A stretch of DNA of 63,787 bases, counting the filler, from Octopus bimaculoides (lineage: Eukaryota): NCBI RefSeq assembly GCF_001194135.2. It is 5 parts of 5 records of this genome, joined end to end, with 100 filler letters (N's around TTAATTAATTAA, not from the genome) between each part and the next. Parts side by side here need not be neighbours in the genome. Positions count along the whole stretch, not along the records: positions 1 to 27,446 come from NC_069003.1; 4 more parts are not named here. One strand, written 5' to 3'. Shown here piece by piece: positions 8,423 through 13,053 of this stretch. The notes below the pieces were generated by a model. It made no database searches and was not told where the DNA came from. It worked only from the letters and a program-made list of their open reading frames with translations. Each line of letters starts with the position of its first letter. The stretch's first letter is position 1. Position numbers and translations under genes: made by a program.

Positions 8423-8641
8423 ATACCGAACTGTCGTCACACATTATCGACTACAAAAAAGAGGCATTGATATGTCCTCCCGGTTGTGCCAGTTGCTCCA
8501 CCCACAATGGATGTCTAGCGTGCAAACAGCGTTATTTTCTCCTGTTACTTCGCTATGGAATGCGCCAAACCGGAGTGTGCCGCCTCACCTGTCCCACCGG
8601 CTTCTACGGCGTGCGACGTCAACACTTCAGCGTCTGTCTCA
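8423..8641 (+). CDS. RSPO: R-spondin exon: furin-like repeat 1 (FU1)
   Basis: ctcttccAG|AT...CTC A|GTAAGT, 219 nt, phase 1-1. Translates xTELSSHIIDYKKEALICPPGCASCSTHNGCLACKQRYFLLLLRYGMRQTGVCRLTCPTGFYGVRRQHFSVCL, with RSPO FU1 cysteine spacing and the R-x-G-M-R-Q-x-G-x-C loop. Confidence 0.93.
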
Positions 8642-9440
8642 GTAAGTATGTCTTCCCCCATCGGATCTTCGGTCGTCAACGGAAACAATAATAGTGATCG
8701 TCAGAGTGGTGTAGCTTACGTGGAGCATTGGTGATGACGAATTAAAATAGTAAAAAATTGAGAAGACAGAAAATTGTGTCTTCTATCATAACCATGGGCC
8801 AACCAAAGCCTTGTGAGAAGATTTGGTAGACCGAAGCTGAAAGAAGCCGTCGTGTGTGTGTGTGTGTATATATATATATATATATATATGTGTGTGTGTG
8901 TGTGTGTGCCTTTGTTCAGGTTTATTTCAAGATTTCTTGCCAATAGAGAAAGAGACGGTTTCTAACCTAGATTCAAGGCTCCTTCATTGGAATTTCAACA
9001 TCAACAACATTTTTGCATGTATGTATGTATGTACGAATGTATATGTGCAGATTTGTATGTTTTGTTTTATGTCTTCTCATGTATATAGTTGTATATCTAG
9101 ACCTGCTCATATATATTTAAATGATAAACTTTTGGAAAGTTTTACAAATTTTTACAGTTCCAGTGGTGGATTGGATTTGTAGTCTTCGAATTAGCTTTCT
9201 CCTTTCTGGTTTTGAGAAGCCTAATTTCCCAAGATTGGTATTTAGGCAGTGTATGTGTGTATAGTCGATTCATTCAACTAAAATTGTTCAAGGCAGTGTC
9301 CCAGCACGGCCGCAGTCTAATAACTGAAACAAGTAAAAGATATTTCAGACAGAGAAATAAACAGTCAAGAAATGTTAGTCCATTCAGTACCGGCCATGTT
9401 GATTTTGGCGCGACCAATGTAGCAACAAACGCACTGTTTA

Positions 9441-9476
9441 CTTCTGATGATGGGTCTCTGTGCTCGAAATATAAAG
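9441..9476 (+). ncRNA. Minimal type-I hammerhead-ribozyme-like motif, sense strand of RSPO intron
   Basis: CUU-CUGAUGA-U-GGG(UCUCUGUG)CUC-GAA-AUAU-A-AAG: complete core, one extra nt after A9, palindromic stem III, AUA triplet. Stems are only 3 bp. Confidence 0.5.
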
Positions 9477-9539
9477 GTTATTAAAATTATTCATTTTCTT
9501 AATCATGAAATGTTCCCCGTCTTCATTATTTTGCAGTAG

Positions 9540-9686
9540 TTGAGTTCAAATTCCGCCGCGGTCAACTTCGCCTTGCATCCTTTCGGGATCGATAAATTAA
9601 TTACCAGTGAAACACTGGGGGGTCGATGTAATCAACTAGTCCCCTACCCCCAAATGTCAGGCCTTTTGCCTATAGTAGAAAGAGTT
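9540..9686 (+). mobile_element. SINE family A, 5'-truncated
   Basis: GAGTTCAAATTCCGCCGCGGTCAACTTCGCCTTGCATCCTTTCGGGATCGATAAATT matches other copies. Confidence 0.8.
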
Positions 9687-10151
9687 ATTTTACAATAGTA
9701 GTGATTATTATTGTCGTTGCTATTTTTAATACACACACACACACATATATATACATACACACACACATACACACACACACACACACACACACACACACAT
9801 ATATATATATATATATATATAGGTAAATTGAAATTTAGAGGTAATACTTGACAATTGTAAGCACCTGTGTACCGCGGAATCCTTTGTAGTTTTGTTGTTA
9901 TTTTTGGGATTTACAATTTATATATATATATATGTGTGTGTGTGTGTGTGTGTGTGTCTGTGTGTGTGTGTCTGTGTGTGTGTCTGTGTCTGTGTCTGTG
10001 TCTGTGTCTGTGTCTGTGTCTGTGTGTGTGTCTGTGCCTGTGTGTGTGTCTGTGTGTATGTGTATATAATTGACTTACCCCCTCCTCCGAAATTACTGTC
10101 CGTGTGCCAAAATTTGAAACCAATATAACAAAAATGTGATTTTAATTTCAG

Positions 10152-10301
10152 AATGCAATGCTGATAAATGCGAGGCATGCTTCAGCAAGAACTACTGCAC
10201 TCGTTGCGAATCTCCTTATGTCGCCTATAAAGGCAAATGCATAAACGGATGCCCCAATGGCTACTATTACGCTAACTACTCCAAAGAATGCCACGAGAGA
10301 G
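10152..10301 (+). CDS. RSPO: R-spondin exon: furin-like repeat 2 (FU2)
   Basis: tttaatttcAG|AA...AGA G|GTGAGT, 150 nt, phase 1-1. (K)CNADKCEACFSKNYCTRCESPYVAYKGKCINGCPNGYYYANYSKECHER. Confidence 0.95.
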
Positions 10302-10354
10302 GTGAGTACATCAACTATTCCTTAGGATCTGTTCCCGATTTCCATGCTATAAGC

Positions 10355-10910
10355 CAGTGGTTCCCAACAGGGGTTCATATGTTCCTAGGGCGTCCGTACA
10401 TGATTTTGCTGTTAAAAATTATCTGCAATGAATTGGTTGTATAATACATAGAATATTTTGATAGTTTTTGAAAATATAATTCCTAATAATTAGCCCAATC
10501 TTGGGCTAATTAACAAGAAAGACGACAACGTTGCACCCAGCCCTGTAAACCAATTATGGACTCTTCACATGAACCTTAGGGATGCATATAAGATTTGTTG
10601 TTAAGAATTATGTGCAATAAACTGGTTATACTCCTACAATACATAGAATATTTTTACAAACCAATTAAGGACCCTTTACCCATTTCAGTGGTTCTCAACC
10701 GGGGTCCATATAAGGTTTGTTCTTAAAAATCTATCTGCAATAAATTTTGTTATGCTTCTACAATCCACAAAATTGTTTAACAATTCCTTAATACAATTCG
10801 TAATAATATTTAATTAAAAGAATATAAAGGGATTTTTTAAACATTGAATAAGGGTCCATCTTTATAAAATAGGAATCAAAGGGGTAAAAAAAAAAAATAA
10901 TAATGGTTGA
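10355..10910. mobile_element. hAT (Charlie-like) MITE remnant with diverged internal duplications
   Basis: CAGTGGTTCCCAAC (10355) and CAGTGGTTCTCAACC (10686) resemble Charlie-type hAT termini. Three related blocks share TTAA.AATTAT.TGCAAT...TACAATACATAGAATATTTT. Confidence 0.5.
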
Positions 10911-11257
10911 CTGGCATAAGCGATCGTGTGTACAATACCCCACCCTTGAATGTAATGCCGTTTGGTATATAAGTCTGAAAATTAGCATTTTTATATTAAA
11001 TGCCCAAATGTGTACGTTGTATATATTTGAATGGAATTGTACTAAGGCATAGCATTGTTAATTTAAAAAAAATATGTTTCAAACTTTTGGCTACGAGTGT
11101 AAGTATAAAATGCAAACTTGACATTTATATTTCACCTGTGGAATATAAATTGGTCTTTCCTTCTTGCAAAATATATCCTGGTCTTTAATAACGTTGTTGG
11201 TCGATCTACGAAATATAAAGTAACGTTTAACAATATTTGTGGTTCAGTATAGTAACT

Positions 11258-11553
11258 GCTATCTATCTATCTATCTATCTATCTATCTATCTATCTATCT
11301 ATCTATCTATCTATCTATCTGTCTGTCTGTCTGTCTGTCTGTCTGTCTGTCTGTCTGTCTGTCTGTCTGCCTGTCTGTCTGCCTGCTTGTCTGTCTGCCT
11401 GCCTGTCTGTCTGTCTATTTGTCTCTCTCTCTCTCCTATCTCTCTATCTATTTGACTGTCTGTTTGTCTATCTGTTTGTCTGTCTGTCTGTCCATCCGTC
11501 TATCTATCTATCTATCTATCTATCTATCTATCTATCTATCTATCTATCTATCT
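11258..11553. repeat. (TCTA)n/(TCTG)n compound microsatellite abutting the TSP1-exon acceptor
   Basis: Directly visible. Ends ...CTATCTATCTTTCAG|. Confidence 0.95.
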
Positions 11554-11558
11554 TTCAG

Positions 11559-11744
11559 TGAACTGCATGGTCGGTTCATGGACCAGCTGGAACTCTTGTT
11601 CCAGAAATGGTCAGACTTGTGGCTACAAATACGGCATCGAGGCCCGCTCTCGTCATGTGTTGCAGTTGCCCTCACCCAACGGAGAACGATGTCCAACCCT
11701 GAGCGAGAACCAAAAATGCAAGATGGTGATGCGATCATGCGCAG
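11559..11744 (+). CDS. RSPO: R-spondin exon: thrombospondin type-1 (TSP1) domain
   Basis: tctttcAG|TG...GCA G|GTAAGT, 186 nt, phase 1-1. (V)NCMVGSWTSWNSCSRNGQTCGYKYGIEARSRHVLQLPSPNGERCPTLSENQKCKMVMRSCA, with WxxWxxC and RSPO-typical CSRN..TCG.K.G.E.R.R and CPT..E...CKM.MR.C. Confidence 0.95.
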
Positions 11745-11930
11745 GTAAGTTTATTTCTAATATAGCATCTAAAGAACCGTTTATACCAGTTATGTACTGA
11801 GGATTCATTCAATCGACTAGACAGTTTTTGTTTCTATAAATGTGAATATGCACATACTCACATGCACACACTGCCCCCCCCCCCCCAAATTTCGGGCCTT
11901 GTACCTAGAGTAAAAAAGAATATTCATTTA

Positions 11931-12150
11931 TAAGGCGGCGAGCTGGCAGAAACGTTAGCACGCTGGGCGATATCCTTAGCGCTATTTTGTCTGTCATTAC
12001 GTTCTGAGTTCAAATTCCGCCGAGGTCAACTTTGCCTTTCATCCTTTCGGGGTCAATAAATTAATTACCAGTTGCGTACTGGGAGTCGATCTAATCGACT
12101 GGACCCCCTACCCCAAAATTTCGAGCCTTGTGCCTAGAGTAGAAGGGAAA
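11931..12150 (+). mobile_element. SINE family A, full length, tail type 1 (a tail-only fragment lies at about 11875-11922)
   Basis: A-box-like TGGCAGAAACG, B-box GAGTTCAAATTCC, multi-copy in window. Confidence 0.85.
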
Positions 12151-12739
12151 AAAAGCATTTTGCCCGCCGTGCTAACGGTTCTGATTGAGAACCAGTTATA
12201 AATAGTCAAATTCATGAACAGTTTTAAAGTCAAATTAAGGGAGACAACTCTTGTTGAACAAGATTCTAATAACTTCCGCTATATTAGACGCCGCGCAATT
12301 TCAGCGGCGCATTTTAAGGAAGGAAGAAAGAATTGCTTTTATTATTTAAGCGTTTAGAATTCAGACTATTCTGTTAAAAGTCATGTTTCTTTATTAACAT
12401 TGTTTTGAATTAGTCATGCATTACCTTGTAGCTTTGAGATTTCAATGATGTGACTGATTATTTTTAGAGTGACATTGTAGGCTAGGTGTGAGAGGCCAGA
12501 TCTGATTGGTTCAAACATGAAGCAAGTTGAATATTTGGGTTGGATATGGCCTGTTTAAATGCGAGGAGAAATGGGCGTTTTCAATATGGCATCAAAGAGG
12601 GCCTTCACTGGAAACGTAGTGAGCTGGTTGAACCGTTAAGCTTGTTGGCTACTGAATTAATAATGTTTGTTTCAAAGCTTTACATTCTGGGTTCGAATTA
12701 GACTGATGTACAAATATTTTTTTTCTTTTCTTTTCTTAG

Positions 12740-13053
12740 ATCTTGCAACGAACAGGTCGGACCCTGCCAGAAGGATGAAATCAGGGATCCGTCGATGGAA
12801 ACGACGCCGGAAACACAAGAAAAGGGGCAAGAAAAAACGTCAGCACCGACGGGGTAAAAAGCGACGTGGGAAGAAGAAGAGACGAAGGAATAAAAAGAGA
12901 CGAAGGAAACAGAAAACGACCAAGTTGATCCCTAAACGGTCAAAGTTGAAACTGACCCCGAAGAGGGTGAAGTCTAAGAAATCGAATCCTAAAAATTCTA
13001 TCAGTATTGAAACAAACGAAATTAGCAGTAAATTGCCGAGGTCAAAAGGTTAA
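12740..13053 (+). CDS. RSPO: R-spondin terminal exon: long basic (Arg/Lys) C-terminal region, stop TAA
   Basis: ttttcttttcttttcttAG|AT, phase 1. (D)LATNRSDPARRMKSGIRRWKRRRKHKKRGKKKRQHRRGKKRRGKKKRRRNKKRRRKQK...LPRSKG*. Position and composition match the RSPO basic region. Confidence 0.88.

What the first reader, a model, noticed from the sequence alone, without database searches (positions are those of the whole stretch)
8423..13053. Complete R-spondin with vertebrate-type exon-per-domain architecture in an apparent mollusc genome
Seen: FU1, FU2, TSP1 and basic region each occupy one exon, all introns phase 1, giving 289 aa in frame. Known: vertebrate RSPO1-4 have this modular layout; Drosophila and C. 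elegans lack RSPO, and the family has been studied mainly in deuterostomes. Inference: the RSPO Wnt-amplifying module and its introns predate the protostome-deuterostome split and survive in cephalopods. I cannot tell whether this ortholog is already annotated; I know of no functional study of it.
Basis: partly seen in the sequence, partly recalled or inferred. Interest (0 to 1): 0.7.

Follow-up and report, generated by a model that had tools for sequence, protein, structure and literature searches.

The report
Octopus R-spondin gene, already annotated
The window holds the last four of five coding exons of the Octopus bimaculoides R-spondin gene, a real and well-conserved Wnt-signal booster, but the gene is already in RefSeq and in a published 2025 family survey, so the finding is correct and ordinary.

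Summary
Four exons (8423-8641, 10152-10301, 11559-11744, 12740-13053, + strand) have canonical AG/GT sites and phase-1 boundaries. They encode FU1, FU2, TSP1 and a basic tail (288 codons plus a split first codon).

The product is 100% identical to RefSeq XP_014773412.1, "R-spondin-2 [Octopus bimaculoides]" (351 aa). "Complete" is wrong: exon 1 (63 N-terminal residues, signal peptide) is not in the window. The annotated gene spans 121.8 kb.

All 22 cysteines and the ZNRF3/RNF43 and LGR contact residues of human RSPO1/2 are kept, except F110 to Y. An AlphaFold model superposes on solved RSPO FU1-FU2 structures.

I mapped introns in mussel, nemertean, starfish, bowfin, tinamou and a human-like contig.

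None of the main points is new. Cheng et al. 2025 list this very transcript (XM_014917926.2) and conclude an Urbilaterian origin. A centipede orthologue was reported in 2014.

My tree places it outside the vertebrate RSPO1-4 clades, so the "RSPO2" and "RSPO4" labels are best-hit or clustering names. Function in any protostome is untested.

The parts
8423..8641 (+). Coding exon 2 of the octopus R-spondin gene. It encodes the linker and furin-like repeat 1 (FU1), residues 63(split)-135 of XP_014773412.1. FU1 carries the ZNRF3/RNF43-contact residues S, N, R, M, Q.
   Evidence: Acceptor ctcttccag|AT, donor CA|gtaagt, phase 1 in and out. Pfam Furin-like_2. Aligned to hRSPO1/2 FU1.
8642..10151 (+). 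Intron between FU1 and FU2 (1510 nt). It interrupts the Lys codon after '...SVCL', the same codon and phase as in vertebrate RSPO1, starfish, mussel and nemertean. It contains a SINE copy (9541-9680) and AC / TGTCTG microsatellites.
10152..10301 (+). Coding exon 3: furin-like repeat 2 (FU2), with the LGR-binding hairpin CFSKNYC (the Phe clamp, with Tyr in place of the second Phe).
   Evidence: Acceptor taatttcag|AA, donor AG|gtgagt, 150 nt, phase 1-1. Residue mapping.
10302..11558 (+). Intron between FU2 and TSP1 (1257 nt). It splits the Val codon two residues before the first TSP1 cysteine, the same position and phase as in bowfin RSPO1, starfish, mussel and nemertean. Its 3' end is a 292-nt (TCTG/TCTA)n array that runs into the acceptor.
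11559..11744 (+). Coding exon 4: the single thrombospondin type 1 repeat (WTSWNSC... six cysteines).
   Evidence: Acceptor tctttcag|TG, donor AG|gtaagt, 186 nt, phase 1-1. Pfam TSP1_spondin. Aligned to the hRSPO2 TSP1. Cuttlefish cDNA matches 11557-11744 at 76.6% nt identity.
11745..12739 (+). Intron between TSP1 and the basic tail (995 nt), one residue after the last TSP1 cysteine. This is the same position as in starfish, mussel and nemertean. It contains a full SINE copy (11925-12150).
12740..13053 (+). Last coding exon: linker plus a basic C-terminal region (104 aa, 51 K/R, 4 D/E), then the stop codon TAA at 13051-13053.
   Evidence: Acceptor tcttttcttag|AT. Composition. Colinear with cuttlefish cDNA from 12738.

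Best explanation
Window 8423-13053 (+) holds coding exons 2 to 5 of the single R-spondin gene of Octopus bimaculoides (RefSeq XP_014773412.1). Exon 1 (signal peptide plus a poorly conserved stretch ending in an R-S-K-R motif) lies outside the window, across a very long first intron. The protein has the full R-spondin layout: FU1, FU2, one TSP1 repeat and a basic tail, each on its own phase-1 exon. It descends from the one R-spondin gene of the bilaterian ancestor, before the vertebrate duplications that produced RSPO1-4. Inferred mechanism (not shown): it is secreted. FU1 binds the ectodomain of a ZNRF3/RNF43-type transmembrane E3 ligase. FU2 binds a type-B LGR, and/or the TSP1 repeat and basic tail bind heparan-sulphate proteoglycans. 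The ligase is then cleared from the membrane, Frizzled receptors persist, and Wnt responses are amplified.
For: Identity: 100% match to XP_014773412.1 over all 288 residues, located on GCA_001194135.2. Exon model: canonical sites, all phase 1. Family: Furin-like_2 at 3.2e-33 and TSP1_spondin at 4.5e-10. Human RSPO2 matches at 1.4e-44 across FU1-FU2-TSP1, and the 12 weaker PDB hits are all RSPO1 or RSPO2 chains. All 22 cysteines of the hRSPO2 fragment are matched. In the AF2 model, residues 81-240 have block-mean pLDDT of 90 or more. The best 34 PDB fold matches are all RSPO1/2 FU1-FU2 (target TM 0.61-0.92), followed by TSR domains. Expression and constraint: cuttlefish cDNA contigs (L001-L004, four sequencing runs) carry an uninterrupted 338-aa ORF, colinear without gaps across all three octopus junctions. 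Nucleotide identity by codon position is 0.84 / 0.87 / 0.44 over 183 codons, which is the pattern of purifying selection. Orthologues occur in O. vulgaris, Argonauta and Sepia pharaonis. Mechanism residues (listed in de Lau 2014, PMC3937510): S48, N51, R66, Q71, R87 and F106 are identical, K59 is R, I69 is M (as in RSPO2), and F110 is Y. Ancestry: the intron positions and phase match in mussel, nemertean, starfish and vertebrate RSPO1. Cephalopods form a clade at 98.5% bootstrap among invertebrate sequences.
Against: No octopus transcript was examined here. The splice model rests on a RefSeq prediction, on canonical sites and on cDNA from a related cephalopod. No signal-peptide predictor was run on exon 1. 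In molluscs the type-B LGR is generally taken to be the bursicon receptor, so LGR use by R-spondin there is open. Wnt potentiation has not been tested for any protostome R-spondin in the literature I could search. TSP1_spondin scores 40.1 bits, just under Pfam's cut-off of 41 for the partial protein. Deep nodes of my NJ tree are weak.
Confidence: 0.85

Rival explanations
1. It is a specific orthologue of one vertebrate paralogue: RSPO2 (the RefSeq name) or RSPO4 (the cluster assigned by Cheng et al. 2025). On this reading the other paralogues were lost in protostomes.
For: The best PDB and BLAST identity is to human RSPO2. Cheng et al., Table S4, give 43.3% against 36.4, 39.5 and 41.5% for RSPO1, 3 and 4. 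Cheng et al. group protostome sequences with RSPO4. The Met at the I69 position is as in RSPO2.
Against: In 200 NJ bootstraps the cephalopods never grouped with the vertebrate RSPO2 clade alone or with the RSPO4 clade alone (0/200 each). RSPO2 itself was recovered in 200/200. The invertebrate sequences (molluscs, brachiopod, nemerteans, annelid, bryozoan, centipede, starfish) sit outside the vertebrate RSPO1-4 groups. This fits RSPO1-4 arising by vertebrate genome duplications (de Lau 2014). The identities to the four human proteins differ by only 7 points.
Confidence: 0.1
2. The four exons are a dead or unexpressed copy, or a gene-prediction artefact, rather than a working gene.
For: No octopus transcript was seen here. 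The locus is full of microsatellites, SINEs and assembly gaps. Exon 1 is about 100 kb or more away. Earlier models (UniProt A0A0L8HCW7; O. vulgaris CAI9739279.1) are truncated to 243 aa.
Against: All four reading frames are open and all splice sites are canonical. All 22 cysteines and the contact residues are kept. The third-codon-position divergence pattern against cuttlefish cDNA indicates purifying selection. The O. vulgaris model (243 aa) differs from the octopus protein at only a few residues. The N-terminus encoded by the distant exon 1 is homologous to the N-termini of the cuttlefish cDNA and Argonauta proteins, so that exon is real.
Confidence: 0.03
3. It is a true R-spondin, but it acts without an LGR. 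It would work through ZNRF3/RNF43 plus heparan-sulphate proteoglycans only, the mode shown for vertebrate RSPO2/3, with LGR4-6 recruitment a later deuterostome addition.
For: It has the RSPO2/3-type Met at the I69 position, and a very long, highly basic tail with 51 K/R in 104 aa. Lebensohn and Rohatgi 2018 (PMC5800842, listed) show LGR-independent signalling. Mollusc type-B LGRs have bursicon as presumed ligand.
Against: The LGR-clamp hairpin is conserved. F106 is kept in 27 of 30 lophotrochozoan sequences. Position 110 is aromatic in all 30 (Y in 24, F in 6). R87 is kept in 27 of 30. This is hard to explain without a binding partner on that face.
Confidence: 0.25

Closest known systems
Vertebrate R-spondins RSPO1-4 (closest by sequence: human/Xenopus RSPO2; PDB 8xft, 4c8v, 4ufr, 4kng)
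   Same: The domain order is the same: signal peptide, FU1, FU2, one TSP1, basic tail. All 22 cysteines are matched. The ZNRF3/RNF43 contacts (S48, N51, R66, Q71) and LGR contacts (R87, F106) are identical. There is one domain per exon with phase-1 introns, and the FU1|FU2 and FU2|TSP1 introns lie in the same codon as in RSPO1.
   Different: It is a single pre-duplication gene, not an orthologue of any one of the four. It is 42-45% identical over FU1-FU2. It has Tyr where vertebrates have F110. It has a longer N-terminal stretch between the signal peptide and FU1. Its tail is longer and more basic. The intron after TSP1 lies 1 residue after the last cysteine, against 4 in bowfin RSPO1. Its first intron is very long, with the gene spanning 121.8 kb.
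Lophotrochozoan R-spondins already in databases (Sepia pharaonis 'RSPO2' CAE1157073.1, Argonauta hians GAB1606248.1, Mytilus, Argopecten, Lingula, Lineus, Lamellibrachia)
   Same: They share the architecture, the Tyr at the clamp position and the R-x-K/R-R motif at the end of exon 1. Mytilus and Lineus have identical intron positions and phases.
   Different: Cephalopods have a longer pre-FU1 segment. Their C-terminus ends ...IETNEI..., instead of the W...C....VF.ND motif of bivalves.
Echinoderm R-spondin (Asterias rubens XP_033644554.1)
   Same: It has five coding exons, all phase 1, and all four introns lie at the same alignment positions as in octopus, including the one after TSP1.
   Different: It is about 46% identical over the core. 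F106 is replaced by Y, and position 110 is not aromatic in this species' sequence (CYSRTVC).

Membership tests
R-spondin (RSPO) family | Two consecutive furin-like cysteine-rich repeats (FU1, FU2). [quoted passage not shown] | tested here: met
   Pfam Furin-like_2 E=3.2e-33 over positions 3-102 of 102. All 22 cysteines of the hRSPO2 fragment are matched. The AF2 model superposes on RSPO1/2 FU1-FU2 crystal structures, target TM up to 0.92 and rmsd 1.3-3.2 A for most.
R-spondin (RSPO) family | A single thrombospondin type 1 repeat directly after FU2. | tested here: met
   TSP1_spondin E=4.5e-10, 40.1 bits, which is 0.9 bit under Pfam's cut-off for the partial protein; the family is on record for the full protein. 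It aligns residue by residue with the hRSPO2 TSP1, including the WxxW motif and the cysteines. Block-mean pLDDT is 90 or more across the domain, and TSR structures are the next fold hits.
R-spondin (RSPO) family | Basic (Lys/Arg-rich) C-terminal region. | tested here: met
   The last exon encodes 104 aa with 51 K/R and 4 D/E.
R-spondin (RSPO) family | N-terminal signal peptide (secreted protein). | tested here: inconclusive
   The signal peptide is not encoded in the window. The RefSeq protein begins MWWPVLVTSYLHAWFLLESVVWTYGA, a hydrophobic stretch modelled as helix 2-24. It is homologous to the N-termini of the cuttlefish and Argonauta proteins. No signal-peptide predictor was available.
R-spondin (RSPO) family | FU1 residues that contact ZNRF3/RNF43 (hRSPO1 S48, N51, R66, Q71). 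| tested here: met
   All four are identical in octopus. They are identical in 27-30 of 30 lophotrochozoan sequences. Binding itself was not tested.
R-spondin (RSPO) family | FU2 and FU1 residues that contact LGR4/5/6 (hRSPO1 F106 and F110 clamp; K59, R87). | tested here: met
   F106 is F, R87 is R, K59 is R and F110 is Y, a conservative aromatic change found in 24 of 30 lophotrochozoans. Whether Tyr still clamps an LGR is untested.
R-spondin (RSPO) family | Gene layout with one domain per exon and phase-1 introns shared with vertebrate RSPO genes. | tested here: met
   Octopus VCL|K|CN and HER|V|NC compare with tinamou and human-like KCI|K|CK and bowfin KCT|K|CK and TST|V|QC, all phase 1. Starfish, mussel and nemertean are identical at all four introns. 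The intron after TSP1 is 3 codons offset in bowfin RSPO1, with the same phase.
R-spondin (RSPO) family | Potentiates Wnt/beta-catenin signalling by removing ZNRF3/RNF43 from the membrane. | not testable with these tools
   This needs a reporter assay and binding assays. No protostome R-spondin assay was found in the held literature.
Vertebrate RSPO2 subfamily (RefSeq name) or RSPO4 subfamily (Cheng et al. 2025 cluster) | Groups inside that paralogue's clade in a phylogeny. | tested here: not met
   The cephalopods joined the RSPO2 clade alone in 0 of 200 NJ bootstraps, and the RSPO4 clade alone in 0 of 200. The RSPO2 clade itself was recovered in 200 of 200. The method is rough (170 columns, distance tree).

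The most novel reading that the evidence does not exclude
The octopus protein is a working Wnt potentiator that uses both a ZNRF3/RNF43-type ligase and a type-B LGR. The RSPO-LGR-ZNRF3 module would then be ancestral to Bilateria, rather than the vertebrate 'add-on' described in the 2014 review. Mollusc type-B LGRs would serve two ligand classes (bursicon and R-spondin), with Tyr replacing the second Phe of the LGR clamp.
Probability: 0.35. Interest if true: 0.55.

Novelty: already known. Interest (0 to 1): 0.15.

Why it matters
It matters little as a discovery. The gene is in RefSeq and UniProt. This exact transcript is in a published survey of 1496 RSPO genes, which already concludes that the family dates to the bilaterian ancestor. 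A centipede orthologue was noted in 2014. This check adds three points. First, the introns, and not only the domains, are conserved in position and phase from octopus, mussel and nemertean to starfish and vertebrates; the 2025 survey does not mention introns or exons. Second, the receptor-contact residues are conserved in protostomes, with a lineage-typical Phe-to-Tyr change in the LGR clamp. Third, the 'RSPO2' and 'RSPO4' labels are not orthology. The open question is functional: whether a protostome R-spondin amplifies Wnt signalling, and through which receptors. Cephalopod arm growth and regeneration would be a reasonable place to ask it.

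Tried and rejected
(1) I looked for exon 1 and the signal peptide in the window. tblastn with the 63 N-terminal residues gave only chance hits, and an ORF list of 1-8422 shows only repeat-derived frames.

(2) I tried to fetch the whole octopus locus.

(3) I tried genomic loci for Lingula (P0008) and Argopecten (P0005). They are not on record, because these are isoform X2 products.

(4) A profile search seeded with protostome sequences plus human RSPO1/2 fragments did not return the vertebrate family, apart from one gar RSPO3. 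I reached vertebrate genomic DNA through a search with the human RSPO1 FU fragment instead.

(5) The tinamou RSPO1 locus contains no detectable TSP1 exon in the stretch retrieved, and its annotated third junction is a misprediction. The vertebrate FU2|TSP1 and TSP1|tail junctions therefore rest on bowfin alone.

(6) De Lau et al. 2012 (Genome Biology) is not held, so I used the 2014 review.

(7) tRNA and Rfam scans of the window found nothing.

(8) Deep nodes of the NJ tree are unresolved. 'Molluscs plus brachiopod' gets 26% and 'vertebrate RSPO1-4' gets 4.5%. I make no claim about which invertebrate group is closest to vertebrates.

(9) Presence of ZNRF3/RNF43 and LGR homologues in octopus could not be tested.

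Full report
**What is in the sequence**

Reading 8000-13500 and splicing by script gives four + strand exons:
- 8423-8641 (219 nt)
- 10152-10301 (150 nt)
- 11559-11744 (186 nt)
- 12740-13053 (314 nt, TAA at 13051-13053)

Each exon is preceded by a pyrimidine tract and AG. The first three are followed by GTAAGT or GTGAGT. Every boundary falls after the first base of a codon (phase 1). The spliced frame has 288 codons plus a stop, after a split first codon.

**What it encodes**

- Pfam finds Furin-like_2 (E=3.2e-33, 100 of 102 profile positions) and TSP1_spondin (E=4.5e-10; 40.1 bits against a cut-off of 41 for this partial protein).
- Against all PDB sequences the best match is human R-spondin-2 (E=1.4e-44, residues 39-222, covering FU1, FU2 and TSP1). 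All twelve weaker hits are RSPO1 or RSPO2 chains.
- All 22 cysteines of the hRSPO2 fragment are matched.
- The last exon encodes 104 residues, of which 51 are K or R.
- An AlphaFold2 model built on 19 homologues has block-mean pLDDT of 90 or more over residues 81-240.
- Its best 34 PDB fold matches are all RSPO1/RSPO2 FU1-FU2 structures (target TM 0.61-0.92). Thrombospondin repeats follow.

**Whose gene it is, and whether it is complete**

The peptide is 100% identical over its whole length to XP_014773412.1, "R-spondin-2 [Octopus bimaculoides]", 351 aa.

That protein has 63 more N-terminal residues: a hydrophobic signal-like start, a low-confidence stretch, and then ...SRSKR|N. tblastn finds no trace of them in the window. 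The annotated gene spans 121,784 bp on a 37.7-Mb contig of GCA_001194135.2. The four exons here span only 4.6 kb, so exon 1 lies on the order of 100 kb upstream. "Complete" is therefore wrong: the window has four of five coding exons.

The distant exon is credible. Its product aligns with the N-termini of the cuttlefish and Argonauta proteins.

**Support for the splices and for selection**

No octopus transcript was available. However, four Logan contigs from four sequencing runs (L001-L004, 1.4-2.6 kb) carry an uninterrupted 338-aa ORF (P0002). P0002 shares a 90% cluster with Sepia pharaonis "RSPO2".

- This cDNA is colinear with the octopus model, without any gap across all three junctions.
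- Over 183 core codons, amino-acid identity is 81%.
- Nucleotide identity by codon position is 0.84, 0.87 and 0.44, which is the signature of a constrained coding sequence.

I mapped exon boundaries by exact spliced translation in other genomes. All introns listed are phase 1.

| Species | Intron 1 | FU1/FU2 | FU2/TSP1 | TSP1/tail |
|---|---|---|---|---|
| Octopus | SKR\|N\|TELSS | VCL\|K\|CNADKC | HER\|V\|NCMVGS | SCA\|D\|LATN |
| Mytilus edulis | KR\|S\|CNSGC | ICN\|K\|CQLDHC | RLL\|V\|DCMAGP | HCA\|D\|ILHN |
| Lineus longissimus | KR\|T\|IIGY | KCT\|R\|CRIPNC | LFQ\|V\|DCEVTA | KCV\|D\|IITN |
| Asterias rubens (deuterostome) | KTK\|A\|CPQGCN | RCS\|K\|CRVENC | VDT\|V\|NCVVSE | YCQ\|E\|DDLI |
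| Tinamou RSPO1 | RR\|I\|STELSQ | KCI\|K\|CKIENC | not read | not read |
| Bowfin RSPO1 | not read | KCT\|K\|CKIDNC | TST\|V\|QCELGE | see below |

- A human-like genomic contig has the acceptor ...ttgcag|TC (splitting I32) and the donor ...ATCA|gtgagt (splitting K96).
- The bowfin TSP1 exon ends at PCGKG+G|gtgagt. That is phase 1, but three codons further from the last cysteine than in octopus.
- The FU1|FU2 and FU2|TSP1 introns are thus in the same codon in every species read.
- The intron after TSP1 is identical in starfish and the three protostomes.
- The first intron always follows a basic motif in phase 1, at a variable distance from FU1.

**Position in the family**

A search of 1.84 billion representatives found 124 proteins at E<=1e-30. 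I aligned 93 RSPO-sized ones plus the hRSPO2 fragment (170 trimmed columns) and built an NJ tree. Source names for 20 of them identify:
- vertebrate RSPO1, 2, 3 and 4 groups, with 2 and 4 neighbours and 1 and 3 neighbours;
- invertebrate sequences from starfish, tunicate, centipede, annelid, bryozoan and nemerteans.

Bootstrap results:
- Cephalopods form a clade in 98.5% of 200 bootstraps.
- Vertebrate RSPO2 forms a clade in 100%.
- Cephalopods join RSPO2 alone or RSPO4 alone in 0%.
- Deep nodes are weak.

I read the gene as the single pre-duplication R-spondin. "R-spondin-2" (RefSeq) and "RSPO4" (Cheng et al.) are best-hit or clustering labels.

**How it probably works (inferred)**

De Lau et al. 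2014 (PMC3937510) list the hRSPO1 residues that contact the receptors:
- ZNRF3/RNF43: S48, N51, R66, Q71.
- LGR4-6: the F106/F110 clamp, plus K59 and R87.

In octopus, S48, N51, R66, Q71, R87 and F106 are identical. K59 is R, I69 is M (as in RSPO2), and F110 is Y. Y occupies the F110 position in 24 of 30 lophotrochozoan sequences and F in the other 6.

The most likely mechanism is the vertebrate one:
- The secreted protein bridges a ZNRF3/RNF43-type ligase (through FU1) to an LGR (through FU2), and/or to heparan-sulphate proteoglycans (through TSP1 and the tail).
- The ligase is removed from the membrane.
- Frizzled persists and Wnt signalling is amplified.

None of this was shown here. I could not check that the octopus has the partner genes.

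**What is already known**

- De Lau 2014 still placed the origin of R-spondins in deuterostomes and called the module vertebrate-only.
- Chipman et al. 2014 reported an R-spondin orthologue in the centipede Strigamia (PMC4244043). It appears in my hit list as P0091.
- Cheng et al. 2025 (PMC12111769) surveyed 430 species and found RSPO in Mollusca, Annelida and Brachiopoda. They concluded that it was present in Urbilateria.
- Their Table S2 lists "Octopus bimaculoides XM_014917926.2 ... RSPO4" with this exact protein sequence.
- Their main text does not mention introns or exons.
- I found no functional work on any mollusc R-spondin.

**Verdict**

It is not complete in the window, and it is already annotated and published. 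Interest is low.

Noticed in passing
window 5564-5780 (-), 9541-9680 (+), 11925-12150 (+), 14701-14862 (+), 14898-15109 (+), 18392-18585 (-), 18651-18819 (-): There are seven copies of one roughly 220-nt SINE-like repeat (81-89% identical to the copy at 11925-12150) in 27 kb. Two of them sit inside R-spondin introns. ARAGORN and Rfam do not recognise them as tRNA or any known RNA family.
   Followed up: partly
window 8070-8410 and 11262-11553: Long microsatellites run right up to two splice acceptors. (ATT)n of 341 nt ends 12 nt before the FU1 exon. A (TCTG/TCTA)n array of 292 nt ends 5 nt before the TSP1 exon and in effect provides its polypyrimidine tract. Length variation there could affect splicing.
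   Followed up: no
window 23395-23643 (+), with a neighbouring ORF at 23883-24107 (+): An 82-aa ORF matches Pfam zf-RVT (zinc-binding region of reverse transcriptases, E=1.6e-5, just under the cut-off). It is probably the tail of a decayed non-LTR retrotransposon, about 10 kb downstream of the R-spondin stop codon. No other protein-coding signal was seen in 13.6-27.4 kb.
   Followed up: partly
L012 (Oratosquilla oratoria, P0036) and P0035 (Portunus trituberculatus): Malacostracan crustaceans have 'R-spondin-like' genes with FU1 and FU2 and a basic tail but no TSP1 repeat. In the mantis shrimp the introns before FU1, between FU1 and FU2 (GVCI|K|CMQRGC) and after FU2 are all phase 1, and the FU1|FU2 intron is at the R-spondin position. 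This looks like loss of the symmetric TSP1 exon. Together with the full-length centipede protein (P0091), it conflicts with the statement in Cheng et al. 2025 that RSPO is absent from all Arthropoda analysed.
   Followed up: partly
P0017 (UniProt A0A0L8HCW7, O. bimaculoides) and P0015 (O. vulgaris CAI9739279.1): Both database models are 243 aa and start at the internal Met of the FU1 motif G-M-R-Q-T-G. They lack the signal peptide and half of FU1, so they are truncated predictions that miss the distant first exon.
   Followed up: yes
End of exon 1 in P0001-P0009 (alignment A1, columns about 68-76); the window exon at 8423 starts just after it: An R-x-K/R-R motif (SRSKR|N, RLRR|N, RKKR|T, RLKR|T, RHKR|T, RGKR|T, RTKR|S) sits at the exon 1 / exon 2 boundary in nine of ten full-length protostome sequences. 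Vertebrate RSPO1 has GKRQRR|I there. It fits the furin-type convertase consensus. In cephalopods it follows a 40-50-residue low-confidence segment, which suggests a removable propeptide. I know of no test of this.
   Followed up: no
C-termini in alignment A1 (columns about 385-430); window 13000-13050: After the basic region, cephalopod proteins end with a conserved ...N/SIETNEI(S/G)S..L(P)R.K(G/R) motif. Bivalve sequences instead share W...C....VF.ND. Vertebrate RSPOs have no counterpart in the fragments compared. The function is unknown.
   Followed up: no
window 1359-1527, 2266-2816, 4438-4669, 6847-7132, 13338-13615, 18839-18966, 19691-20499, 21700-21858, 22877-23288, 25901-26517: There are ten assembly gaps (runs of N, 128-809 nt) in 27 kb, mostly flanked by AT/TA or AC dinucleotide repeats. 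One begins 285 nt after the stop codon, so the 3' UTR cannot be followed in this assembly.
   Followed up: no
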